A stretch of 63,654 nt of DNA, counting the filler, from Platydemus manokwari (taxonomy: Eukaryota): the NCBI GenBank assembly GCA_037951405.1. It is 4 parts of 4 records of this genome, joined end to end, with 100 filler letters (N's around TTAATTAATTAA, not from the genome) between each part and the next. Parts side by side here need not be neighbours in the genome. Positions count along the whole stretch, not along the records: positions 18,790 to 35,187 come from JBBMOY011179211.1; 3 more parts are not named here. One strand, given 5' to 3'. Both the position numbers and the translations under genes were made by a program. The notes under the pieces are model-generated. The model did no database searches. It was not told where the DNA came from and saw nothing but the letters and a program-made list of their open reading frames with translations. Below are positions 18,790 to 35,187 of this stretch, in pieces (positions within the stretch are counted from its first letter, which is position 1; each line of letters starts with the position of its first letter).

Positions 18790-19051
18790 AAATTATTTGC
18801 TTAAATCAAATAAACATTATTATTTAATTTTGTTTTGACTCTGTATTACTATGTTATAAACAATTTATATAATAATAATTTATAGTTTTTCCTAGAACTG
18901 ATGATTGTTTTGATATTATAAATTTATCTGCCTCACATTTTATTGTAAATAATTAACAATATTGAATGGAATAATGATAAAATAAAATTCAATCCATCAC
19001 TTTCTCTTTTAAAAGGACTGAAATGTATATTTTATGTGTTTTTTCATTCAG

Positions 19052-19254
19052 ATCGACAGAATATTTCAAAAGAGGAAAATTCAATAAAGTTGCCACTAAA
19101 ATTACTCCTAAGTAAAGAAAGAAAGAATTAATGAATCAGTTTAATTTGAACATGATGTAGGCCAAATACATATTATGGTATCATTCATCTACCGATCGGT
19201 ATTTATACGTATAAGTTTATTGTCGATGACAGATGGATACATGATAATAATAAG
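19052..19254 (+). CDS. PRKAB: AMPK beta subunit, CBM48 glycogen-binding exons (19052-19111, 19161-19254); 5' end not found
   Basis: GT-AG exons around a 49-nt intron splice to STEYFKRGKFNKVATKITPK|PNTYYGIIHLPIGIYTYKFIVDDRWIHDNNK, matching the AMPK-beta CBM pattern L..G...YKF.VDG.W.HD. Confidence 0.8.
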
Positions 19255-19969
19255 GTTATATTGTTTGACTTTTTAATATATATTTGCAAATATTACTGTA
19301 AAATCACAATCAAAATAAATTGCGTTCAAGTGATACAAATATTTAATTCTTATATCAATTATCAAATGAAGCTTTTAAGAAAGTTTTAAAATTTCTCATA
19401 AATAGGCTAATCTATATTCTTGTCAGATTTAAATAAAATTCATTAATTATATTATTTTCCTTTGGTATTGTAATGATTTTCAAGACGATTTGTTTGTAAT
19501 TTGAAATTCTTTTTTGATATTTGTGTGGCTTAAATATGGAAAATAATTCAAAATGTCATGAAACACAATGTTGTTCTGTAGATACAAGAGATATTAAAGA
19601 AACATGAACAAAACATTAGATACAGTTATTTCAAATATTTTTGTGATATCAATATAGGTATTTACTATAAAATAATTCTGATAATAATGATGATAATAGC
19701 AATAGTTAGCTGACGTAAGTCAGTTACGTAATTATTATGGTGTTCAAGAGTTTAGCAATTGTTACCAAATCACTTTTCATTAGCATATGTTATTAGATGC
19801 CATTCTGTTGTGTTCTTACTTTGATAATGATAATCATGATAAATTATTATTTGTCGCGTAAAAAAAATCACGTTAAAAATAACGCGCGAACGTTTTAATT
19901 ATTTTGGTCTTTAAATCAGTTGTATTGAAATTTCATCTTTAAAAAGACATTCCAATATTACCTTTTACT

Positions 19970-20643
19970 GTAGAGGAACCCCACGGAAACATTCCTCTGG
20001 TTCGAGGAATCCCTGTGCAATAGTTTGATTGTTTTATGCAGTAAACAGCATTTCTTTTTTTAAAATTTATGTTCAGCTTATTGTATATGTTTGTTGATGA
20101 AATGAAAACAAAATTTTACATGTTAGAATAGACTAAATTTATTCTTATCAAAAACTTAATGGGAAATTTGAGCCTGATGTTTCATGCACAACAATTTAAG
20201 ATTCGCTAGTGTTTTTCACAGAAACACGCGATGTTCATCTTCCACAAACAGCAATTGTGCTCGTTTCTTGTGTTTAATGATTGTCAGAGCTGAAAATCCA
20301 AATCCACACAAATATGAGGTTGAAAATTCCACAAGAAGTCGTAGCTATTTATGGGCAGTTGCAGGATATTCCTTTTCAACCAGCAACCAAAATATATAAA
20401 AGGAGACTTAATAGTGGTAGGACAAAGTGATCTTTCAAATGGAGAGAGTTTAATTTATGTTGAATTTAGTATATTCAAACGCTAAATAATAAAAATAATA
20501 ATAAAAATAATAATAAAATAATTATTATTATAAAATAGATTTTCGAAATTGAATTTAGCATGTTGTTCATTTGTTCGTTGTTCTAATTTAGAAATTACGA
20601 AACCCCTGGAATGTGCTTGTGGAACCCTTGTTGAAAACCACTG
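19970..20643 (-). mobile_element. Non-autonomous hAT (Buster/Charlie-type) deletion derivative in an AMPK-beta intron
   Basis: Minus-strand FWLLVEKEYPATAHK*LRLLVEFSTSYLCGFGFSALTIIKHKKR is the hAT dimerisation domain. TIR-like gttgaaaaccactg ends at 20643, with GGAACCC subterminal motifs near both ends. Confidence 0.8.
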
Positions 20644-21899
20644 TTTTAATGTATATAAAACATCTCAACAAATCAGAGAAACATATACTGCTCATAAAAA
20701 AATTGTAAATTTCGTTGTTTCTTTTTGAAACAGTTCTCAGTTTTGCCATTGATTGTCATTTCAAAATTTAAGACTCATTCCTTTAGATTAAATATCCTTA
20801 ACACATTAAATATAAATTATTGGACTTAATTATTTTAATATTTTTACAAGTAAAACGAAATCACATAGTGATGTTTGTGAGATAAAATTCTAATCTCAAA
20901 ATCATCAATATTAAAATAACATAATATTATTTAGTCATTACGTTTTCTTATAAGTTTGATTAATTCTGTAATTCTGTATTTGAAATGATATCAAGATCCT
21001 TCAGTAATTGATCATTTAGAATTTATAATACAATTATATTTAATTTTTGAGGCATTGATTGAAGCCAACATTCCTAATAAAAAATTCTTTTCTAATTCAA
21101 ATTAAGAATCTATCATTCAAATCAAACCTAAAAAATCGAACTTATACTTCTGTGGAGTGTGCCAGAAATTACTCATAATCACGCTTGAAAACTCTTGGAA
21201 TGAGAAGTACAACTGTCAAATAACACATGGCTTCAATAGCCAATCACAAGCCTTAAAATTAATAAACTTCCATTGATTTTCCATTTCCACTAACAGAAAA
21301 ACCTACACTAAAATGTCCAGTTGGCAAATGGTTCTATCAAATAAAAAGTAAAATTTTAAGCAATAAATAAACACACCCATCCTGGCTTTTAAAAGGAGTT
21401 GACTTTCGAAAAAGGCTGTCAGCATTTTTGGTCGATAAATGATTTCGTATTTGATCACGTTGATTTTGCTCTCTTGATTTTTATGAGTTTATGTTTATTA
21501 TTGTATATTATTAGATCAAAATGACGTTTGAGACAAATCAATGTTTATGAGTATAGTTTATTAATATAATTTATTACGCTCTATTCATTTAGCCGACAAT
21601 TGTAAATTCATTCGGGACACTAGAAAATGTGATCGAAATAAAAAATTCGGATTTCAATATTCTCACGGCTCTTGAAAACGACGAGACTACAGCCACAAAA
21701 TCGAGAAGAATGGTTGTAAGGCCAAATATTTATTTACTTTTTATTCCAATATTTGAGTTTTCTATTCTGAATGAATTATTTGCTGAAATTTAGAGCTCAC
21801 AATAAACTTACTTATCGATAATGATAATTAATAAACTCTAAAGGTTTTTGACAAATTATCAAACAATAACAATATTTTTCAGAGATTTTGTAACCCCTA

Positions 21900-23110
21900 T
21901 TTTGAAGAATCTAGATGATTGTTGAATGGTTTGTTTGTAGTTATGTATTTTTTTATTATTACAGTTACGGGTACTGCCTGTTGTGATTTCTACGACTATC
22001 AATCTGTATTTATGCAATAAAAATTAGATTTCGTTAAGATAGGTAATGAGATGTTCTGCCTGAGTCATTTGAGGGCAATTTTATTTTAAAAATTCAGTCT
22101 TTCGACTTTCTTTTCATTAACTGGATTTTGTGATATTTTTTTATGCATCTGTATCACGTTCTGTTTTCCTGCAGATGTTATCTCGATGAGAACCATTGTG
22201 TTTTACTATTGTGTTGATTTCTTTTTCACCTTCTTTTTCAGAGCATGAATCTAAAAAACCTTCGGTTTTGCATAGCCATTAATTCTTCAGAGACGGTAGT
22301 TGGTCTGAATATGGATCATCAATGTTGTTTGGTTGTAACAGGTTATTATTTTCAAGAATGAATTGATTAAAATAGTTTTATCGCTCTATGACAATATATT
22401 TGCTCATATAGCCGCTCGATTTTTACATGGTACTGCTTGGCAGTTTTCGTGAGTTGATTGAGGAATTTGTTCATAATCTTTTTGGGTGAATTCTGGTCTC
22501 CATTCGTTTCTTTCTTTCACCATCATTTCATTGTCTTGATATTTTAAGTATAAATACGAGGTATACTTCTTGATTTTTCTTTCATTAATGTCTTGATTTT
22601 TTAGAGTCCTAAACGATGAATTGAATAGTCACTGTTTCTAATGTCAATTTCTCTGTTATCTTCATTGGGTGGTATGCTGTGCTGATCTATTTGATCTATA
22701 TTGCACTTTTGTTTATTTTCATGAGGCACAAATTTGTTCCAATCTGGTGACGCCTATTTTAACAAGGCAAGTCACTCATATGTAAGCTGAGAGTTGCTTT
22801 AATGAGTAGAAGTAATTTTTCCCATAGATGATTGTTTGCATTGTTCTCTGAATCTAGTTTTTGTTAGACTATCTTTCACTTTGGGAGTATAAGTGATATT
22901 TTTTTAATGCGTGGTGAGTTAGATACCTTTAAACTCACTGTTAACCTAAGCTTTAGTAGCATGACATACACGGCACTTGGCAGTACATTGTCTATGTTTT
23001 GTGCATTGTCTATAACGATGCAGTATATTTTTAACAAACTCTTTATGGAAATGAAAACATTTTTAGCAGAGTGTTGTTTGGAAACCAGTATTCAACCTAA
23101 AGCTGTCAAT
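21900..23110 (-). mobile_element. Decayed non-LTR retrotransposon (probably restriction-like-endonuclease type)
   Basis: Degenerate minus-strand RT-like motifs (IDNAQNIDNVLP, NHLWEKLLL, KIERLY) and LIVVEITTG near the 3' end; heavily mutated. Confidence 0.4.
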
Positions 23111-23306
23111 CAATCCAAGTCAAGTTATGCAGTTCTATTAATTAATTATGCCATTTGACTATTTAAAGATAGACATTATTTCGTTCCTCATGATTAACTA
23201 ATTCTTTTTTAAAAATATATAGTCTGAATTTATTATAAATAAAAATATATATATTTGTAAAGTTTATTTTATTACAAAAAATAATAATTATTATTATTAT
23301 ACCCAG

Positions 23307-23561
23307 GAAGAGTTTCAGTATCCGAACATGTATACAAATATTATTCCTGACTATAATGATGATCTTCGTTTTGCACAAGCTCTACCCTCTGAAATTCCAC
23401 CTTATCTGGATCAAAAAGTTAATTATTAAGATCATTTAAAATATATTTTTCATAATTCTTTTTTTTAGATTATAATAGACAATGATATTGAATGTGATAA
23501 TCCGACTTTATTACCGACAAACCATGTCATCTTTAATCATATTCTAACACAGTCAACAAAG
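23307..23561 (+). CDS. PRKAB: AMPK beta subunit, exons 23307-23417 and 23469-23561 (start of ASC/AMPKBI domain)
   Basis: Phase-0 exons give EEFQYPNMYTNIIPDYNDDLRFAQALPSEIPPYLDQK|IIIDNDIECDNPTLLPTNHVIFNHILTQSTK, matching PP.LPPHL...CDPALLPEPNHVMLNHLYALSIK. The intron is 51 nt. An alternative in-frame acceptor lies at 23318. Confidence 0.9.
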
Positions 23562-23869
23562 GTTGGTCAATATATAATGCTATAAAACATGAATTTTACT
23601 TTGAATTTGATACTTATTTTTTTAGATCTTAATTCTGATGGTTATATCTGTTTGTTTCAATCGATTGTAACCAAGCTACTGTTGCTGTCGATTTTTCGTT
23701 TTATTTTATCTTGTTTCTTTATATTACCATAGAAAGATTATTAAATTTTGTGTCATATAACATCAGCATTTTTATACCACGTTGTGATGTCATATCTCAA
23801 TGAACGAAAATTTAAAGATGACGTAATATATGTACCGGTGGAGCACCATTAATGGTTGGTTCTATTAAA

Positions 23870-24996
23870 GGTTTTGTATCTTCAGTGGAAAAATAGAATC
23901 CTAACATAGTACGAACTCATTGTTTTTAACACAGAGAAGTATTAGTTTCAAAGATAGCACAAAATGAACTAAGGTGGGCATATAATCAAGTGATCGAAAT
24001 GGTAGATTCCAAAAAAACTTGGCCGTTGAAGTCCAGAATTATTGAGTTACTGTGCAAGGACATGGATTCTCATTATTTTTATTTACTATTGCACACAGAC
24101 ATAAGATGGTTATCAAAAGGAAATATGCTAACTCGAGTATTTCAGCTTCAGAAAGAACTTTTTATTTTTTTTGAAAATGAAAAGCTTGATATATTTTTGT
24201 AAATTCCTTAAAAATGAATTGTGAATGTCCAGAATAGAGTACTTAAGTGAGATATTTGGATATCTCAATAGTCTGAATAGCAATATGCAAGGCAGAAATG
24301 AAAATATTCTTACGGCAACAGATAAATTAGTTACTATTAAGATAAAAATGCAATTTGGAATAAAAGAATGGTGGTAAACCATTTGGATATGTTTCCATCA
24401 GTTCGCAAAACCTGTGTTACTTATTATTATTAGTGAGCATTTGACAATTTTGGAAAATAATATTGAGGGATATTTCCCCTTAATCAGTATTGACGAATTT
24501 TATTAGATTCGCAATCCTTTCCTATATTTATCAATCATTAATCTTTCCAACTTTGAGTAATGTGAAGAAGAAAAACTAGCGAGTCTTTCCAGTGATCAGG
24601 GACTCAAACTGACGTGCACACAACTGCTATTTGGCGCTTTTGGATTTCTGTAAGGGAGAGTATCCAACTCTTAGTAAAATACTTAAAAACATTGAAGAAG
24701 AGTTAGTAGTATGCCTTTCTCACATTCGTCCGCAAACTGCAGCAGTACTAAAGAAGCACCAAACACGACTGTCCCACTGAAATTGACTACTATTATTCTA
24801 TACCCGGTATTGAATACAAGATATATTGTATTTATGTGATTAAAAATTCTCCTTATATAATCTTCTTTGTTTTATATTATTTCATTGCAAAAAATCCTTA
24901 TGGGTAGAAAATATTTATTTTTTGTGATAGATATGCCGTGAGAATTTAAAGAGCTCAATGGTGTGGTGCGAGGTACAAAAAGGTTGAGAACCACTG
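23870..24996 (+). mobile_element. hAT Buster/ZBED5-like transposase fossil with 3' TIR
   Basis: THCF*HREVL (CxxH motif), LLLHTDIRWLSKGNML, YLSEIFGYLNSLNSNMQGRNENIL; element ends in ggttgagaaccactg at 24996. Confidence 0.9.
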
Positions 24997-26445
24997 TTGG
25001 GATCAATATTTTCTCCAAGACCTTATCGCATTTTAATATCTCAATTTCCAATATCGGATAAATAAAAATTCACCCCATTATTGAATATGAATTTATTATA
25101 TTTTAAATTTTATTCTGCCAATCTTATATGGAATCTGTAGAATAAGAATTTGTCATAGCATTTTTAACATTCAATTGATTATGAGATCTCGCATATTATT
25201 GTAGATTTATATCCATTTAACACTAAATTATTGTATAATTATCATTTGATATTTCGTAAGATTTTAAAACGAATTAAAATTTCAAAGATTTAAAAATCAG
25301 AATTTATATTAATAAATATTAATTTGTTTAATTTATAGTGGTTATATTTATTTTGTTGTGTGAATTTTGATCTTTTCCATTGCGTGCTTCATAAAATGGT
25401 AGCTGCTTACATCGCAATTGTGAGGTTTATTTAAGAATACGATAAATAATTATAATTTACAAAAGATTAAAATTTTTAAAGATATTTTTAAAAAATCATA
25501 TTAAAAATAAATGTACCATATTGATATTTATAAAAGGATCTTGTTTAAAAAATTACTGTTGAATTCTCAATTTTAAAATTATTAAAATTATTAAAGTTAC
25601 TAAATTAGTTTAAAATAAAAAATTAAGATGTAATATAAAAATGTGGGTATTTTTATTTGGATTAAAAAATAAGAAAAATCAGATAGAAATTAAAAATTTG
25701 AAAATTAATGTATAAATACATGGATTTTTGTTCTGTTGTAAACATGTCTTTTGATCTGAATATCAAAAATGAAGAAATTTTGGCAACTAACAGCGATCAC
25801 ATTTTCGGATTCGAGAATATATGAGAATTTAAAAATACACAGAAAATCAAGTATTTTAAAGAAAGTAGTGTGTTCAGTTAGTTTCCAGTATATACTTTAT
25901 TAAACATTAGAGGCTTGCATACAGAAAAGATTTTTTTCTTTTTAAATTTTTTTTCTAAAACTCTCACTGTAGTCGCATAAGTTTTTCAAAAATATATTAA
26001 TTTTTACTCTGCTAAATAAACATCACAATTTTTTGTATGAATAATTTTTTTTTAATATTGATCGAATGTTTTTATTTATGTTGAATTCTTAAAACAATAG
26101 GTATAAACCTACTTATTGACTAGGTAATTTTTATCAAAGCAATGCCACGTATTTATTAATTGTTAAAAAGGAATAATGTTTTTGAAATCAATTTCTTTTT
26201 TATCTCAGCTTGAAATCAGTTTTAAAATAATATTTAATAATTCATGGCGTCCAAATTTTATTCATCTTGATGTCTTTTGAGATTTAAATAAATTATTAAT
26301 TGATATTATTTTATTAAAATTAAACTTATTTTATTCAATCAAAAATTAATTAATTTTTATTAAATTTTAAAATAATTATTTTAATTTGATTTATGATTTA
26401 ATTTATTTTCACAAAAATTGCAAATCATTTTATTTTTGTTTGCAG

Positions 26446-26526
26446 AATAACGTGGTTATGCTCAGCGTTATAAAGAGTTTCAGAGAAAAAGTTGTGACGA
26501 CTGTATTCTATCAACCTGCTAATTAA
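26446..26526 (+). CDS. PRKAB: AMPK beta subunit, terminal exon
   Basis: Acceptor tttgcag, then NNVVMLSVIKSFREKVVTTVFYQPAN*, matching the canonical DGVMVLSATHRYKKKYVTTLLYKPI*. Confidence 0.9.
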   Translation, partial: NNVVMLSVIKSFREKVVTTVFYQPAN

Positions 26527-29500
26527 TTCGAACTCATATTTAATTATTTTTATTTAAATTTTTTTCTATTAAATTCATTTTCAATTTTTCAATTGATTTC
26601 AAAATTTATCAAAAATGTTTTATCGATTATGATAATTTAAATTGGGATAATCTAAAATTAGATAATTAAATCTGATTTATTTAATAATAATATAAAATTT
26701 AAATTCAAAGCTACATTGATAATATAATAACTGATTCTTTCTCAATAATATATAATCATATCAGCAAATAATATTATAACCTTGTTTCATGCGTGCGTGG
26801 AAGACTTTTATTATCGACTATCATCTTTTTGGGTTAGTTTGAATGAATATTTTGTTGGTAGTATCAAATATGTAATTAAAATTCACAGAATAGTTGTTTC
26901 TCTTTTAAAATAAATGTTGGGTATATCACAAATTAGTCAAAATGGTCCCATGAACCAAGAAACAAACCTGAAAAACACACGTGCCGTTAACCAATTAGAT
27001 TCGTTCTAATGTTAATCCATATTTAGAAGCTAAGAATAGACAGACAGCAAGCTCGAATATCCGCAAATGACATGACATATATGAGGAAAATTTTAAGTAA
27101 ATCAATTCACAAATAAATTTAGCTAATTGAAAAGAAGATTCGCGACATCAAACAGAAACACCCTATAAAAGAGGCTCAATTCTTTTTGGTTGGTAACTTT
27201 AGTTCTTAGCTTATGTGTGATTTCAGTAATCAGTCGTTTTGATTACTCTTTATTCTGTGTTTGACTTCCAGGCGCTGATCCCTTCTTGAGTAATTTTTTT
27301 GTGAATTGCGTAAATATTTGTTATTGTTATTATTGAGACTTTGAGTGTATTATTTTTAGATTCAAATTGTTGTTAATATACGAACAAATAGGTAGATACA
27401 TAGAAAAGTTCATGATAAGTGAAATTGTGTTAAATCGTATGACATGACAAGAGTTTACGCTGTGAAAAAAGATTAGAATTAAAAATAAACCCTTAAATCC
27501 ATCTTGTTAAGCATAATACTGCCAGGAACATAAGTATTGTGTCATAGGATGGTCACCTTCATAATTAATTATTAATTATTTATAAAACATATTATCACTA
27601 TAAATTTATTAGTTTCAATGTCGTAATTCTTGGTTATCAGTATTTAAAACTTTTATGTTATCATTTCATACTTTAATTTTTACATTTTTCATTCACCTTT
27701 ATTAATATTTTCTGTCTTTTTATATTATTTCTCTGTATTATATTTGTGCCTATTTTCATATATTTTTAATCAATATTATTTAAATAATAACATGTTAGAG
27801 GGAGCTGTTTTAAATAAATAGATGTAGCTATTGAATATAAATGAAAATTTAATGATGATGATGATGATGATGGCTAAGAAGCTAACTAACAAAAACATAA
27901 ATAAAATATTAACCGGTTTCGTGGCTACTAGTTCTATCGATTAGGACTTCACTGATGCGTACAAATTCATATTTGTGAAATTAAAATTTGAGTGAATTCT
28001 TAATTTAATTAAAGTAAGTCCAACTTAAAATGAAATTAAAACACACTATCGATAATTGACAACAATATGATGAAGAAAATATATTGAATATTTATCACCT
28101 CCGAAAAGAAAACAATAATAATGCGATTGTAAAATGCCAGGTAATATTGTTATCTACATGGGTAACTTTTTCCTAGAATACGAGGAAAATCGATAATTGC
28201 TATTTGTTAGATCAATTGATCTTCAAATTATCGTTTGTTTATTTTCTAATAATTTGATTTGGGTGTAATTATACTCAGTTTTTATGTGATTTAATCTCCC
28301 AATTCTTTTTTTATGTTTCTGTTATTATTTCTGTTCTTGCTTTGTTCTTTATTGATTATTATTGTTATTTTATTCCAAATTATTTTCCCTAATAAAATAT
28401 CAAGACAAAAATCAAAGATAAGGTTTTATTTTTACAATCATTTTTTAAAATTTTCATTTTTCTCGCATACATTATTGTTTACATAAATAAGGCACAATAA
28501 GTAAACCACTTAAAATCGTCACAAAAACAAATAAAACATAATTGGGTTTTTGTCTTGACTTTTCATTTCTGATTTATTCAAACAACGAATTTTGCTGACT
28601 CAAAATTCATAGACTTCGAATATTGGCATATCCCAACAATATTTTCAGTTATTTGATAATATGATCAAAAGAAATATCACTTAATAAATTACTTAAATTT
28701 AATAAGTAATATAATTTAATAAGTTGTTATTAAAACTTTATAATAGTTAATAAGGTTTAGATTTTAATATTTGTAACTTGTTCACGTTGCTATTGTGATG
28801 ATATTTAAAATTTAATGTAAAAAAAATTAAGATTAAAAAGATTATAGGATATTTTAAAATTTTTATTAATTTATAAAAGGCGATTTATAATATATTTTCA
28901 TTTATAATATCCCGAATTATTTAAGTAATATGAATTGAAAAATATAATTTTTGGATGCTGAAATTGATGACGTATAATATTGACAACCAACAAATTAATG
29001 CTACTAACAAGTAGTAAAGCAAGAAATTATAAAATAGATCAATTTCAGATTAAAGCCCCGATTTTAGCTTAAACCAATTTTTTGTTTTGATCTAGCTAGC
29101 TAGCCACATCGCTTTTAAATGATCTCAAGTGAGTTTCATTTCAAATACATCCTCTGATGGGTTAATTGCAACGACTATATTCAACTGCATAAGCTTTCAA
29201 ATTAATTATAATACTTTCATGAACTGCATTAAAATTATTTTTACAATTACTGATATAAAATAAAATGATAACCGATTAGAGAATAAAACTTCAAGTTACT
29301 TAATATTTAATTTTGAAATAATGTACACATGTGTGGAAACAATTTTATTAATCTCCTCAATTTGTCATTAAAGTTCACTACTCGACATTTTCTACCAAGA
29401 TTCCTTTACAGAATAACATCTCTTAATAAAGATTATAAAATTGTTTCTTATTATACAATGGCTTTATTATTTGTTTTGTAAGTTAGTGGATATTTAACAT

Positions 29501-31666
29501 ATTCATGCTATTTTCATAGTGGCCAATTCTGATCGATTGAGTTAATTATTGATGACTTGCATTTGTGCAATCTCAATTATAAGCATGTATATCACAAAAT
29601 AGATATTATTCGACAATTTTCTTATCTGTTTACAGTGTTGAAATTTATTATTTACTTCAATTGTTCCGAAGTTATTTTATAAACCTACATCCGTTTACAA
29701 TGTCGATATTGATTATTTATTTCAATCGTTCCGAAGTTATTTTGCAAATCTAAATGGATACATTTTTATTTATTATCACTATAATTAACCTCAGACCCGC
29801 GACTATTCTTATGATCTTTTAAAATCTAATAAGAACTTACTTTAGGTTCTTCATTTTTATTTTTTATAGATGTTTTTTCTATCATCTAGGTGGTACACCC
29901 TTTACTATTCACTTGATGATACTAAACATCCACAATAGATTTATATATTATCTGCTAGTTGTTATAAAATTATTTTGAATATTTTTGACTGTCAAGTGTT
30001 TCAGTTGTTGAACATTGTAATATAATTTAGTATTTATATTTCAAATATTATTTTGATTATTATATTCGGGTGATTATTATCGCTAATAATCTTTATTTGT
30101 TTGAAATCGAGAAAGATAAGTTAAAGATTCTAAACCACTTTGACTTAAAGCTATAAATTGTATTGACGTTAACAAATCTTTAACAATTCTTTGTATTTTT
30201 ATATCTATTTCATTTAGTTTTCATTTGTTACAAAGTAGGTTCATATGGAAAAATATGACTTTCTGTGAATGATAATGTTGTAGGCATCGCTTGTTTGTTA
30301 TAGCTGTAGAATGCAGTGGTGTGGTTAAAATGTTAAAGTGACCAAGTCCATGACCAGGCTATCTATTAAGTATATTGGAAGTGGTATGAAAATTAATTGG
30401 AACTATTCTTCTGAAAGCCTTATTTAAAATTATATTAACATTAAAAAGTAATTTTTTTATTTTAATTGTAAAAATTATAATTAAAAATTTGTAGTTATTG
30501 AATTTCTATCACTTTCAACTATGAATATTTTTGTTGATTTTTTTATTCTTCTTTTAATCTTGAATGGCATTATAAAGAAGCATTAAAACTAGACATTTTT
30601 GATCTTCAAAATATCCGTAAAATTTTAAAAATTAAAGATTCTTCTGGAAGGAATATGTTGATGAATATCGATTTTTATTTTCAAAAAATGATATTTCTAT
30701 TTATGAAAGAAGCTCATTAATGTCAATGCTGTGAGCACATAAATAATGAATTGAAATTTGAAAAAATGTTTAAAATCAGATTATTATAAAATATTAAGTA
30801 TGTTTATATAATTAAAATAAAATATAATTTAGTGTCATGACTTTTCAGTGTGTTTCCAAAGCGTGTTTAATAAAATGTAGCGGCTTACAAAAATTAAGAA
30901 GAGTTACAAATTTAGTGCCTAGGAAACGCTACGAAATTAAATCGACTCTCAAGGATTTTTCAAACATCGACAATCTTTGTTTGACCTTTTCCAACACTCG
31001 CTGTATGTGATCGAATTTTGTCGAACGACGTCAGTTGCTACAGAAACCAACCGATCTAAGAGACATTTTACAAACATTCTAAATTATTTGACATAAAATG
31101 AATTTGAATTTTTAGAGAAAAAACATTTTAACTAAATGGATTTTATCATTATCATAAAACCACTCAAATTTAGATTTTAAAACAGAGTCATTGTGGCTAC
31201 CTTTAGATGAACATTTTAATTGATTTTATCTAGCAGAGATTTTATTGGATAATCATGATAATAATAATATAATTTGTGTATATGCGTATTTTATAATTTA
31301 AATGTCGGTGTTTCGTGAAAATTGTCCTGACAATCTAAGTTAAGGTTTTTCAATTTGACTTCCAAGGATTAGTCTGGATTTTTATTCCTTTTGTATTTAT
31401 TTTATAGATACCATAGGACATGCACATCCGAATTTTGGTTGCATTATTGAACTTTAATGCATACTAAAATTGTAATAATAAAATCTCAATATTAGCCATA
31501 ATATTCTATTAGAAAAATGTTTCTTTGTGACATGATTTGTTATGAATTTGATTTGATTATAATACGTTTTTCTAGTTTAAGTTTTATTAATTTATAGCTT
31601 TTAATTTTCTTCGAGATTGTCTTTAATACGACTTCTCTTTTCTCTTTCCATAGCAAGAAAGAAAAA

Positions 31667-33616
31667 CTAATTATCAACCAAATCTACTTCTGTTTCGGTA
31701 TCAATCTCACATGATTCAAATAAGGATTCTTTTAGTTTTGATTGCAAATATTTTTTGAAATAAAATTTATTGTGACGAAATTTATTTGATTTTTTCTTAT
31801 GCTCTTTAATGTTTTCATAACAAGATAGATTGGAGATGTTATTGAAACGCTCTTTATTATTAATTGATATTCTGATTTGATTTGGATTAAGACGATTATT
31901 AGAAAGATAACACGATGTTGTCAATGAATTATTGTGTTCCTCTTGAAGTGCTATAGAAAATGAGTTAAAGAAAGGTTTGCATTGTATTGATGATAGATAA
32001 TTTTTGTGTTGAAATACTCTTTTATTAGACAATCGTCTACAAATGTCTCTAGTTATTTTAGGAAGTTTCAATTTCGAGGATTTGAGTTGTTCTACAACCA
32101 TTTCATTTAAATCAACATCATAGGAAACTGACATCATTAATTTCCCAGAATCAGCTATTCCAATAGAATTAGAGTTTCTCATTTTACTTAATGAATTCGG
32201 AATTAAATATGTGATACAATCAATACTATCGGGGCTTGAAACACCGTTTTGATTGTTGTGAGTTCTTTTAGTGGTACCTGTTTCAATTTCCGATTCACAA
32301 AATGATTCCAGATCTTTATATTTTTCGATTTGATCAACCAGCTTATCCAAAGCAGAATCGAATGAAGTTTTTTCGATGCCTTCAGAAATAAACCAATGGA
32401 GATAAGCTTTCTTTTCCAATAATTTCGAATAATGATTTTTCAAACGATCCCATATCTTGGTAATTGATGTGGTATTTCCAAGATTACAAAGAGCTCTAGG
32501 TAGTTCTTCAATGTCTGTACAAGGAATAACACCTGGTAATTGGCCACTGATTGAGACCTTAAAATGACTCGGACACCAATCAACAAAATGTATATCAGAA
32601 TCGTTTTGTAAATATTTTAATCCATAATTGATAAGAGATGGACAACAATTTTCTCCACGATATAACAAGCAACATGATGTATATTTTCCCGAACTTGGAT
32701 CAATGGATATCGTTTGGTTTTCCAAATTAAAACTCAAACCAGCTAATTGATCGGGTGAAGCATGCATATCTACAGTAAATGGTACGTATGATACAATCGG
32801 ATAATGTATTCCGGGATATGGAACCAGATTTGTTTGGAAAATGGAGAAATCACTGGACATCTGACTAAAATATCGGTAAGATGTGGTTAATGAACTGAAT
32901 ATTTGGGATATGCGACGATTCAAATTAATATATTTAGGGTTATATTGTTTAAGTAATCTACTACAGATATTATAAAGAGCCTGATTGTCGAATAAAACCA
33001 TTAGATCGGCCTCGTTACCGAATGATGCCAGAGCTAGTACTTCATTGTATGGCTCAACAACACTTGTCGATAAAGAAGGTGACGATGAAATACAAAGATG
33101 AACAGTCGATGATTTTGGATTTAGTTGGCGAATTTTTTCCGTGATTCGTCCAGTTAACCCGGAACCAGTGCCTCCACCAATGGCATGAAACAAAATGAAT
33201 CCATTCAACATATCAGCTTTTTCAATTAAATGTCTAATATGATCGAAAATATTACCCATCATTTCATTGGCACAATAATGAAAACCTCGTCCAAAATTCC
33301 CCGAAGCACAATCCGACCCACTAATCAAACAAGTATTTTCAAATGAATTATAATGAATATGATCACGGATTTCATCAATGACCATAGATTCTGTATCGAT
33401 AAACAAGCTTCGTGGACAAAATCTGCCATTGTCAATCTCATGAAATAATGAATGAGTATTGTCGATCAATGGATCGGGACAATAACATAACATGTTTCCA
33501 TGATAATCCAATTCATGTTCTACTTTCATTAATTCCCACACCGCACTACCAATTTGTATACCAGCTTGTCCAATATGGAGACAGATAATTTCTCGGCCAT
33601 GTTTTATAAAACCCAT
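31667..33616 (-). CDS. Intronless divergent alpha-tubulin with ~210-aa C-terminal extension (649 aa)
   Basis: [49 protein letters not shown].FKV and [10 protein letters not shown]. The FQTNLVPYP and FVDWCP variants are alpha-type rather than beta-type. Confidence 0.93.
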   Translation of the reverse strand: [649 protein letters not shown]

Positions 33617-33722
33617 TTCAATAATTTTAAAATAAAATAAAAATCCATTATAAAACCAATATCTATATTAAAAAATATTAATTCGTTTTTTGTATAAATA
33701 TTTAATTCTTTATTTAATCGGT

Positions 33723-34425
33723 TTAGAAAATTGCATCCCATCCAGAATTCTCGTCCGCAGCATTATCCAATTCTTCTGGATAAATGTCGAAATTCGAACC
33801 ATCGAATGGATCTTTGATCTGTAATAAAATTGTAATTTAATTAATTAATTTATCAAATGAAAATAATAATAAATCATTATAAATTTATAAACACAATTAC
33901 AATCATCTACTCACAATCAACTGGAAAATGATAATGAGTTGATAAAATTATACAAAAGGGGATTGGGTTATACATTGATGAATGAAAAAAAATTATCTCA
34001 AAATAAGTTAAAATAAAATTAAACATAAAGAAGCTGATAACTGTTTGTAAGTAATACAATAGTGGTAAAAATAAAATTAAACTTTATATGATTTTCCGAT
34101 TAAGGTAAATCAAAATTACTTTTGGAGCAAACGGTGATTTCAACTTCATTTTTCGCAATTTATCCCATTCGAATCCTTGAAAATATCTAAATTCAAAAAT
34201 AAAACAGATCTGAAAATTGGCATAATTTTTTACTTATGGGATCTGATGTCCTGATATCCATTTTTACCATTTCCTAAACGTTCCGGTGGACTTTTACAAC
34301 ATAGTTGAATGATTAAACTGATAGCTTTTGGTGATAATTTTTTATTATGCGTTAAATCGATCGATTCGAAACCTTTTAATATCATTGAATAAATTTTCAT
34401 TGGTTCAGATGCTGAAAATGGAGGC
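33723..34425 (-). CDS. PRKG: cGMP-dependent protein kinase, last three exons (34234-34425, 34120-34186, 33723-33818)
   Basis: Spliced peptide PPFSASEPMKIYSMILKG...PPERLGNGKNGYQDIRSHK|YFQGFEWDKLRKMKLKSPFAPK|IKDPFDGSNFDIYPEELDNAADENSGWDAIF*. All junctions are GT-AG and phases agree. The DE.SGWD..F* ending is typical of PKG. Confidence 0.9.
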
Positions 34426-34669
34426 CTATGGGAATGATTGATAAGATCATATATCAATAATTAATAATATGGATAATATATCTAGCAAATATTATCATTA
34501 TAATTATTATAAAATTATGCAAATCTTTCACAATTCATATCACATTAATCTCTTTATTTATTTATTTGAAGGTCATTTAGATTCAAAATAATTGGGACAG
34601 ACTCGTGGAAATAATATGTCGAAAATGATATTTATATGAATATCTTTGATAGAAATTCACCTTTGGAAC

Positions 34670-34694
34670 TCTCCTCTCTCTCTCTTTTGATACG

Positions 34695-34728
<34 letters not shown>

Positions 34729-34737
34729 ATGTGTGTG
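34670..34737. repeat. Compound microsatellite (CT)n/(AT)n/(TG)n
   Basis: Directly visible in the sequence. Confidence 0.9.
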
Positions 34738-35187
34738 CAAATAATAAGATGATCAAAGACAACCTTTTAATAATAAAATACCATTTTGTTTAAATGATGT
34801 CAACGCATAATTGTGAAGAATTGATTTCACATTCAAATGTTCATATTTCAGATGGTTTGAGAAATTAAAATAAATCAAATGTTAGTCGTACTTCAATAAA
34901 TGTCAAATAAAACAAAAACAACAAAAAAACAACAACAAACGTTGATTTGTTTAGTTTAATATCGATTTTTGTTCCATGGCTCCAAATGATGTCAGGATCA
35001 AATTTGTTGAGTGTTTCTAAATCTCAAACCGATTCAAATTTCATTGAGTTGATTTTGTTGATATGATTCCAGGTCATTGTAAAATGATATCAATCAATGA
35101 CGAATTAAAATGGTGTAGCATTTTGACATGTTGTGAAGATTATTTAATGTTATCAAATGATATTTAATAGTTGTTATTAAAATGGTG

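What the first reader, a model, noticed from the sequence alone, without database searches (positions are those of the whole stretch)
32820..32880. Alpha-tubulin lacking the catalytic E254: predicted GAP-dead tubulin
Seen: [23 protein letters not shown] aligns without gaps to canonical [23 protein letters not shown]. E254 becomes Ile (codon ATT, 32842-32840, residue 259) and the T7 GxxNxD motif becomes SxxSxD, while GGGTGSG and D251 are kept. Known: alpha-E254 completes the beta-tubulin E-site to hydrolyse GTP, and E254A mutants give hyperstable GTP-lattice microtubules. Inference: a natural non-catalytic alpha-tubulin that could stabilise, cap or poison microtubules, for example in sperm or cilia. 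The intact 1950-nt frame argues against a pseudogene.
Basis: partly seen in the sequence, partly recalled or inferred. Interest (0 to 1): 0.8.

Follow-up and report, generated by a model that had tools for sequence, protein, structure and literature searches.

The report
Flatworm-type alpha-tubulin without catalytic glutamate
An intact, intron-free gene encodes a very divergent alpha-tubulin whose GTPase-activating glutamate is replaced by isoleucine; this is real, but it is one member of a large planarian-type expansion of alpha-tubulin copies, most of which have also lost that glutamate.

Summary
ORF 31667-33616 (minus strand, 649 aa) is an alpha-class tubulin of about 39% identity to canonical alpha. 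It has Ile259 (ATT, 32842-32840) where alpha-tubulin has Glu254, SxxSxD in place of the T7 motif GxxNxD, and keeps GGGTGSG and D251.

It also has a 5-residue M-loop deletion, no K40, an altered T3 loop and H12 surface, a displaced N-terminal MRE motif, and a roughly 200-aa disordered non-acidic tail instead of the acidic tail.

The ORF is not a decayed pseudogene: chance openness is about 1e-23, and its GC content follows codon position.

Its only close relative among about 15 billion proteins is Schmidtea mediterranea SMEST067760001.1 ("alpha.53"), at 48% identity and with Val at the same site. A published table lists 62 planarian alpha-tubulins. Of the 26 informative rows I read, 17 lack Glu254.

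A GAP-deficient alpha-tubulin with a long tail was already proposed for Toxoplasma alpha3. So this is one more case of a recurrent, barely studied pattern, not a unique oddity.

The mechanism is inferred, not shown: it may block hydrolysis on the beta subunit beneath it, or it may not enter a lattice at all. No expression data or ortholog DNA were available. Interest is moderate.

The parts
31667..33616 (-). Complete intron-free CDS (649 aa plus stop) of the divergent alpha-like tubulin
   Evidence: ORF list; Pfam Tubulin 6.3e-49 and Tubulin_C 3.7e-19; best PDB hits are all alpha-tubulin, E about 1e-104
32963..33592 (-). Tubulin/FtsZ GTPase domain (residues 9-218), N-site nucleotide loops largely intact
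   Evidence: Pfam PF00091; 16 of 19 conserved N-site loop positions kept
33158..33178 (-). T4 signature GGGTGSG (residues 147-153), intact
32825..32866 (-). T7 loop and helix H8 (residues 251-264): [14 protein letters not shown]; G246S, N249S, V250S, D251 kept, E254I
32840..32842 (-). Codon 259 ATT = Ile at the position of the catalytic Glu254
   Evidence: sequence read directly; alignment
32747..32788 (-). Shortened M-loop (residues 277-290): 5-residue deletion that removes H283 and E284; shared with S. mediterranea alpha.53
32438..32815 (-). Tubulin C-terminal domain (residues 268-393), including the alpha-specific S9-S10 insert at full length
   Evidence: Pfam PF03953; gapless against alpha in this stretch
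31670..32278 (-). About 200-aa N/S/K-rich tail that replaces the acidic tail; predicted disordered; no detectable similarity to the tail of the planarian relative
   Evidence: AlphaFold pLDDT below 50 for 452-649 apart from weak helices; BLASTP of the two tails E 1.1; 29 K/R vs 21 D/E; frame open at log10 P = -7.4

Best explanation
This is a functional, lineage-specific alpha-tubulin paralogue of the flatworm (planarian-type) alpha-tubulin expansion.

It keeps the alpha fold and most of the non-exchangeable GTP site. It also keeps much of the minus-end longitudinal face ([14 protein letters not shown], K352). It has lost the Glu that alpha-tubulin inserts into the beta-tubulin E-site of the dimer beneath it.

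The most likely mechanism is inferred, not shown. It pairs with a beta-tubulin. Wherever such a dimer sits on another dimer, the GTP on the beta subunit below cannot be hydrolysed. The result would be GTP-state, hyperstable patches or whole non-dynamic polymers.

The altered M-loop, H1-S2 loop and H12, and the long disordered non-acidic tail, imply different lateral packing and a different set of binding partners from ordinary microtubules.

My confidence that it is a selected, alpha-derived, GAP-deficient gene is about 0.75. My confidence in the lattice-stabilising mechanism specifically is about 0.35. The figure given below is for the combined statement.
For: - Alpha class: PDB hits are all alpha at about 1e-104. 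BLASTP gives 317-335 bits to alpha against 210-223 to beta. The alpha-specific S9-S10 insert is kept. It lies in the alpha clade, 100* against a beta outgroup.
- Fold: AlphaFold gives pLDDT above 90 for residues 9-446. Foldseek TM-score to alpha-tubulin chains is 0.96, rmsd 1.3-1.5 A.
- Constraint: log10 P(open frame) = -23. GC1/GC2/GC3 are 0.42/0.37/0.26 against a flank GC of 0.26. The nucleotide loops are kept at 16/19 while the surface elements are not. It shares 20 derived residues with S. mediterranea alpha.53 at positions that are otherwise at least 98% conserved.
- Loss of Glu is stable in kin: Val in alpha.53, Leu in alpha.49, Met in P0326.
- Known role of the residue: E254A abolishes hydrolysis and yields stable GTP lattices (PMC7018511, PMC8764682).
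- Family context: 62 alpha-tubulins in the planarian genome (PMC12579930).
Against: - There is no expression evidence for this gene. No RNA run was found.
- No ortholog DNA was available, so no dN/dS could be computed.
- T3-loop residues D98 and N101, which sense the gamma-phosphate of the N-site GTP, are changed (C and G).
- The M-loop is shortened and H12 is rewritten, so co-assembly with canonical tubulin may fail.
- No partner beta-tubulin was identified.
- The grouping with alpha.49 and the 19-row clade could be partly long-branch attraction. WIN scores lower against alpha.49 (289 bits) than against canonical alpha (335 bits).
Confidence: 0.5

Rival explanations
1. It is a functional tubulin-fold protein that no longer enters microtubule lattices. 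It could be a soluble binder or sequestering partner of beta-tubulin or of tubulin chaperones. It could also be a building block of a different, lineage-specific polymer organised by its long tail.
For: The lateral and outer surfaces are the most degraded: M-loop 2/8, H12 1/5, H11 1/5, H1-S2 4/9 conserved positions kept. There is a 5-residue M-loop deletion. The acidic tail is replaced by a disordered tail of about 200 aa. The N-terminal MRE motif is displaced by six residues.
Against: The longitudinal elements [9 protein letters not shown], VDWCP and K352 and the N-site loops remain conserved. That is what one expects if head-to-tail tubulin contacts are still used.
Confidence: 0.3
2. It is a non-functional or dying retrocopy: one of many surplus alpha-tubulin duplicates drifting towards loss, with the Glu loss a symptom of relaxed constraint.
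For: It is intronless, highly divergent (39% to canonical alpha) and belongs to a very large expansion in which redundancy is likely. RNAi of one planarian alpha gave no phenotype (PMC12579930). No RNA evidence was found here.
Against: A 649-codon open frame sits in 27% GC DNA (log10 P = -23). GC1 and GC2 stay well above the background GC3. The nucleotide-binding core is selectively retained. An intact relative exists at 48% identity with shared derived residues and the same M-loop deletion. The fold is predicted with high confidence.
Confidence: 0.1
3. Assembly or base-calling error at codon 259, or misassignment of the tubulin class, so that the missing Glu is an artefact.
Against: All sampled 31-mers of the stretch occur in a public run. 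The whole T7 loop is changed, not one base. The nearest relatives carry Val, Leu or Met at the same column. The alpha-class assignment is robust.
Confidence: 0.02

Closest known systems
Schmidtea mediterranea alpha-tubulin 'alpha.53' (SMEST067760001.1; UniParc UPI0006084C13 = P0038)
   Same: It is the only close relative found (48% identity over the tubulin domain; 99* sister in the tree). It shares the LCYCP motif in the H1-S2 loop, SSLTTSYR...SSDF in T7, the 5-residue M-loop deletion, a hydrophobic residue at 254 (Val), an N-terminal extension before REIIC, and a long non-acidic tail.
   Different: Only 48% identical. The tails are of different length (about 200 vs 400 aa) and show no detectable similarity. 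T3 residue 101 is Gly here and Ser there. Whether the two are orthologs or paralogs is unknown. The window's own motif is absent from the S. mediterranea table, so the window comes from another species.
The planarian alpha-tubulin expansion (62 alpha vs 8 beta genes; Table S1 of PMC12579930)
   Same: These are divergent alpha-class paralogs, many with long C-terminal extensions. Of 26 informative rows read, 17 lack Glu254 (Q x7, V x4, D x2, A, H, L, S). Across the whole table the canonical EFQTNL motif occurs 9 times against 48 TNL[VI]P[YF]P motifs.
   Different: The paper only enumerates the genes and studies one muscle isotype (tuba-2). In the passages I retrieved it says nothing about catalytic residues. 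The window's gene is not in that list.
Toxoplasma gondii alpha3-tubulin and its coccidian homologs
   Same: This is an alpha-tubulin isotype that lacks the canonical GAP residues and has an unusually long C-terminal tail, altered M and H1-S2 loops and an N-terminal insertion. Its authors proposed slowed or absent GAP activity and stabilised polymers (PMC10056924).
   Different: It is an independent lineage (Apicomplexa). There both D251 and E254 are replaced (T and Q/H) with a Glu shifted to 253. Here D251 is kept and no nearby acid exists. That tail is 48 aa; this one is about 200.
Engineered human alpha-tubulin E254A / E254D
   Same: The same residue is removed. These mutants show what loss of the Glu does: hydrolysis is blocked or slowed and GTP-lattice microtubules are stable (PMC7018511, PMC8764682).
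   Different: Those are single substitutions in an otherwise canonical alpha-tubulin. This natural protein differs at about 60% of positions, including the lateral and outer surfaces.

Membership tests
alpha-tubulin (class within the tubulin superfamily) | Tubulin/FtsZ GTPase domain followed by the tubulin C-terminal domain | tested here: met
   PF00091 6.3e-49 and PF03953 3.7e-19; Foldseek TM 0.96 to alpha chains
alpha-tubulin (class within the tubulin superfamily) | Closer to alpha than to other classes; placed inside the alpha clade | tested here: met
   The best 60 PDB hits are all alpha. 317-335 bits to alpha vs 210-223 to beta. Alpha clade 100* against a beta outgroup. Gamma, delta and epsilon tubulins were not in the tree.
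alpha-tubulin (class within the tubulin superfamily) | Alpha-specific 8-residue insert in the S9-S10 loop | tested here: met
   Aligned without a gap to alpha in [25 protein letters not shown]. The sequence of the insert is poorly conserved (3/8).
alpha-tubulin (class within the tubulin superfamily) | GGGTGSG signature and N-site GTP-binding residues | tested here: met
   Q11, D69, E71, GGGTGSG, E183, N206, Y224 and N228 are kept. D98C and N101G in T3 are exceptions.
alpha-tubulin (class within the tubulin superfamily) | Catalytic pair D251/E254 in T7-H8 | tested here: not met
   D251 is kept (D256); E254 is Ile259
alpha-tubulin (class within the tubulin superfamily) | Short acidic C-terminal tail with terminal Tyr, and an MRE(C/I/V) N-terminus | tested here: not met
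   The tail is about 200 aa with KR 29 / DE 21. The N-terminus is [11 protein letters not shown].
Planarian-type divergent alpha-tubulin expansion (alpha.53 subgroup) | Nearest relative and well-supported sister is a member of the expansion | tested here: met
   P0038 is the only hit scoring above canonical alpha-tubulins in an exhaustive HMMER search. It is identified as SMEST067760001.1 alpha.53. Sister support is 99-100*.
Planarian-type divergent alpha-tubulin expansion (alpha.53 subgroup) | Shared derived characters (M-loop deletion, LCYCP, SSDF, long tail) | tested here: met
Planarian-type divergent alpha-tubulin expansion (alpha.53 subgroup) | Host organism is a flatworm | tested here: inconclusive
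   The organism is coded. The inference rests only on kinship to S. mediterranea genes, 27% GC, and a wider clade that holds entries from assemblies GCA_008508345.1 and GCA_900604375.1. I recall these as helminth genomes but could not verify that.
GAP-deficient long-tailed alpha isotypes (Toxoplasma alpha3 type) | Loss of canonical GAP residues plus a long C-terminal tail | tested here: met
   E254I and a tail of about 200 aa; description of alpha3 in PMC10056924. This is a resemblance in kind.
GAP-deficient long-tailed alpha isotypes (Toxoplasma alpha3 type) | Common descent with alpha3 | not tested
Independent origin is expected because the nearest relatives are planarian paralogs.

The most novel reading that the evidence does not exclude
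Flatworms may have evolved a large repertoire, dozens of genes per genome, of alpha-tubulins that cannot activate GTP hydrolysis. This gene would be one of them. Together they would build hydrolysis-free, non-dynamic microtubule-like lattices, or seed permanent GTP islands, in particular cell types. Each would carry a different long disordered tail as its own code for binding partners. That would make them natural counterparts of the engineered E254A tubulins.
Probability: 0.25. Interest if true: 0.75.

Novelty: new member of a known kind. Interest (0 to 1): 0.45.

Why it matters
Glu254 of alpha-tubulin is the residue that makes microtubules dynamic. Natural proteins without it would show what cells do with lattices that never hydrolyse GTP.

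This single gene adds little by itself. It did lead to a pattern that I did not find discussed in the papers I searched and read. In the planarian alpha-tubulin expansion, about two thirds of the paralogs I could inspect lack the catalytic Glu, and many carry long non-acidic tails.

If these proteins assemble, they offer ready-made natural reagents and a comparative system for studying the GTP cap, lattice stability and tail-based regulation. If they do not assemble, they are a case of large-scale reuse of the tubulin fold for another purpose.

Tried and rejected
1. Genome-contig scan with the family alignment. That collection holds only bacteria and archaea, so nothing relevant came back; the scan was wasted.
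2. Metagenome-contig scan. It returned 68 loci, all at or below 44% identity: canonical or other alpha-tubulins, no ortholog. No dN/dS was therefore possible.
3. Word searches with the window protein, P0038 and P0131. The top ranks are dominated by fused canonical tubulins. The only family members recovered were P0038 and P0326. P0121, which ranked second in the exhaustive search, is a tandem fusion of canonical Symbiodinium alpha-tubulins, not kin.
4. Sequencing runs. One coded DNA run and no RNA run were found. Laying its contigs gave only short stray matches. There is thus no expression test and no independent read check.
5. Rfam over the piece found nothing.
6. Tail-against-tail BLAST found no similarity.
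7. My impression that 23990-24780 holds remnants of a hAT-type transposase got no Pfam support.
8. Literature look-ups of accession numbers (QNGE, GCA_008508345, the SRR and ERZ ids, the UniParc id) found nothing. The helminth origin of those assemblies rests on my memory only.
10. I did not compute dN/dS from the roughly 400-nt cDNA snippet of alpha.53 printed in the paper's table. It would have required typing sequence by hand, and dS is certainly saturated at 48% protein identity.

No contig that I took for human was encountered.

Full report
OBSERVATION

The piece 18790-35187 contains one long ORF, 31667..33616 on the minus strand (649 aa, ATG start). Pfam finds a Tubulin/FtsZ GTPase domain (residues 9-218, 6.3e-49) and a tubulin C-terminal domain (268-393, 3.7e-19).

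A phmmer search of the Protein Data Bank returns alpha-tubulins only among the best 60 hits (E 8.5e-104 to about 1e-99). The printed alignments are gapless through T7/H8: [23 protein letters not shown] against [23 protein letters not shown]. Codon 259 lies at 32842-32840 and reads ATT.

A residue audit against canonical numbering gives G246S, N249S, V250S, D251 kept (D256) and E254I. GGGTGSG is intact.

IS IT A REAL GENE?

The piece is 26.8% GC. Stop trinucleotides make up 7.85% of all trinucleotides in the flanks. The chance of 649 open codons is therefore about 1e-23, and of the 209-codon tail alone about 4e-8.

Within the tubulin domain, GC1/GC2/GC3 are 0.42/0.37/0.26, while the flanks are 0.26. 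Third positions have relaxed to background and first and second positions have not. That is the signature of coding constraint. The tail shows the same pattern more weakly (0.32/0.31/0.22).

AlphaFold2 with a 55-row alignment gives pLDDT above 90 for residues 9-446. The tail is disordered, with a few low-confidence helices. Foldseek places the model on alpha-tubulin chains with TM 0.96 and rmsd 1.3-1.5 A.

I could not test expression. Only one coded DNA run holds the stretch, and no RNA run was listed. Laying that run's contigs was uninformative.

WHICH CLASS?

BLASTP gives 317-335 bits (38-40% identity) to canonical alpha-tubulins and 210-223 bits (30-32%) to beta-tubulins. The alpha-specific S9-S10 insert is present at full length.

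In both a FastTree tree of 105 rows and an IQ-TREE LG+C20 tree of 51 rows, the protein lies inside the alpha clade. Support is 100* against a beta outgroup. Gamma, delta and epsilon tubulins were not available for the tree.

HOW DIVERGENT?

Among 218 positions that are at least 95% conserved in 250 canonical alpha domains, the protein keeps 111. The losses are not spread evenly:

- N-site nucleotide loops T1, T2, T4, T5 and H7: 16/19 kept.
- T3 loop: 3/9 kept, including D98C and N101G.
- T7 and H8: 7/13 kept.
- M-loop: 2/8 kept, with a 5-residue deletion that removes H283 and E284.
- H1-S2 loop: 4/9 kept, with K40 replaced by Cys.
- H11: 1/5 kept.
- H12: 1/5 kept, including E415K, E417S and E420S. 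These numbers come, whose numbering runs one too high and is corrected here.

The acidic tail with its terminal Tyr is replaced by about 200 residues rich in N, S and K (29 K/R, 21 D/E). Six extra residues precede the REII motif, so the nascent N-terminus is not MRE(C/I).

By contrast [9 protein letters not shown], VDWCP and K352 on the minus-end longitudinal face are retained. So the nucleotide pocket and the head-to-tail face are the best preserved parts. The lateral and outer surfaces are rewritten.

RELATIVES

An exhaustive HMMER search of 1.84 billion cluster representatives used a profile of the window protein plus P0038. Nothing scored above the canonical alpha-tubulins except P0038 itself. 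P0121 also ranked high, but it is a tandem fusion of canonical dinoflagellate alpha-tubulins.

P0038 is 48% identical over the domain and has Val at position 254. It shares the M-loop deletion, the LCYCP motif and SSLTTSYR...SSDF, and it has a 400-aa tail with no detectable similarity to the tail here. In the databases it was unnamed and present only in UniParc.

I identified it through the supplementary Table S1 of PMC12579930. It is Schmidtea mediterranea SMEST067760001.1, "alpha.53". The next relative, P0131, is "alpha.49" (Leu at 254). P0137, P0136 and P0156 are alpha.42, alpha.19 and alpha.50.

[quoted passage not shown] The window's own T7/H8 motif does not occur in the table. The window therefore comes from a different species, most plausibly another flatworm.

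In both trees the window protein, alpha.53 and alpha.49 sit inside a 19-row clade of divergent alpha-likes (support 97*). That clade also holds proteins from assemblies GCA_008508345.1 and GCA_900604375.1. I recall these as helminth genomes but could not verify it.

HOW UNUSUAL IS THE MISSING GLU?

It is not unusual within this radiation.

- Planarian table: I read 26 informative rows (alpha.1-8, 10-19, 48-50, 52-54, 56, 57). Glu254 is present in 9 and absent in 17 (Q seven times, V four, D two, and A, H, L and S once each).
- Whole table: the canonical EFQTNL string occurs 9 times against 48 TNL[VI]P[YF]P motifs.
- Database hits: in my hmmalign survey of 389 tubulin domains, 46 alpha-like domains lack Glu.
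- 19-row clade: 11 members lack Glu, and most carry C-terminal extensions of 37 to 635 residues.
- 51-row tree: the Glu/non-Glu state changes at least 9 times.

Outside animals, Toxoplasma alpha3-tubulin and its coccidian homologs were already described as lacking D251/E254 and carrying very long tails. Their authors proposed that GAP activity is slowed or absent (PMC10056924).

MECHANISM

These points are established knowledge. Alpha-Glu254 completes the E-site of the beta-tubulin beneath it. E254A blocks hydrolysis and gives stable GTP-lattice microtubules (PMC7018511, PMC8764682).

These points are shown here. The Glu is gone, no neighbouring acid replaces it, the fold and the N-site are preserved, and the loss is stable in the nearest kin.

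The rest is inferred. If the protein still dimerises with a beta-tubulin and adds onto a protofilament, the GTP of the beta subunit below it would persist. A few such dimers would give stabilised patches. A polymer made only of them would be non-dynamic.

The rewritten M-loop, H1-S2 loop, H12 and tail argue that lateral packing and partner binding differ from normal microtubules. They leave open a rival in which the protein never enters a lattice.

A dying retrocopy is unlikely given the open frame, the codon-position composition and the selective retention of the core. A sequence artefact is very unlikely.

SURROUNDINGS

On the same strand, the last three exons of a cGMP-dependent protein kinase end at 33723-33725 with ...NSGWDAIF*. 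The best PDB matches are PKG I at 7e-14, against 4e-4 for PKC and 2e-3 for PKA. That stop lies only 106 nt upstream of the tubulin ATG.

The 13 kb downstream of the tubulin gene (18790-31666) holds no convincing ORF.

VERDICT

The gene is a new member of a known but essentially unstudied kind: the Glu-less, long-tailed alpha-tubulin paralogs of the planarian-type expansion, with a published conceptual precedent in Toxoplasma alpha3.

Interest is moderate for the gene itself. The wider pattern, in which most planarian alpha-tubulin paralogs lack the catalytic residue, is the more interesting lead.

Noticed in passing
window 33723-34425 (minus strand); inferred exons 34425-34234, 34186-34120, 33818-33723: These are the three 3' exons of a cGMP-dependent protein kinase (PKG), ending ...NSGWDAIF*. 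PDB phmmer gives PKG I at 7e-14 against PKC at 4e-4 and PKA at 2e-3. The stop codon lies only 106 nt upstream of the tubulin ATG on the same strand, with ATTAAATAAA just after it. A pyrimidine/AT-rich tract ending in AG (ttttttaatatag) lies about 45 nt before the ATG. This may point to tight packing, or to a polycistronic or trans-spliced arrangement. The splice sites were inferred by eye.
   Followed up: partly
Table S1 of PMC12579930 (S. mediterranea); P0038, P0131, P0136, P0137, P0156: About two thirds of the planarian alpha-tubulin paralogs inspected (17 of 26 informative rows) lack the catalytic Glu254. Several also lack D251. Only 9 of at least 48 H8 motifs in the table are the canonical EFQTNL. 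I found no discussion of this in the papers I read.
   Followed up: partly
L003, L004, L008 (Logan contigs of run SRR33002330): One unnamed sample carries at least three complete members of the same radiation: P0168 and P0173 with Ile at 254, and P0326 with Met at 254 and Glu at 253 (61% identical to planarian alpha.49). They sit on contigs of 1.5-2.1 kb that look like transcripts. This suggests that such paralogs are expressed in a second species. Neither the organism nor the library type is known to me.
   Followed up: partly
window 34690-34745: Compound microsatellite (CA)n(TA)n followed by (GA)n, in the intron or upstream region of the PKG gene.
   Followed up: no
window 23990-24780 (plus strand): Short ORFs in different frames (for example ...DIRWLSKGNMLTRVFQLQKELFIFF...) reminded me of decayed hAT/FAM200-type transposase remnants. 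Pfam gave no support, so this remains an impression only.
   Followed up: partly
L002 (ENA ERZ28669879, 92-kb contig, 31.7% GC): Another intron-free 683-aa alpha-like tubulin (P0177, Ser at 254, N at 251, 247-aa tail) lies beside a gene with alpha-2-macroglobulin/TED hits. It appears to be an animal contig inside what is filed as an assembly of a mixed sample.
   Followed up: no
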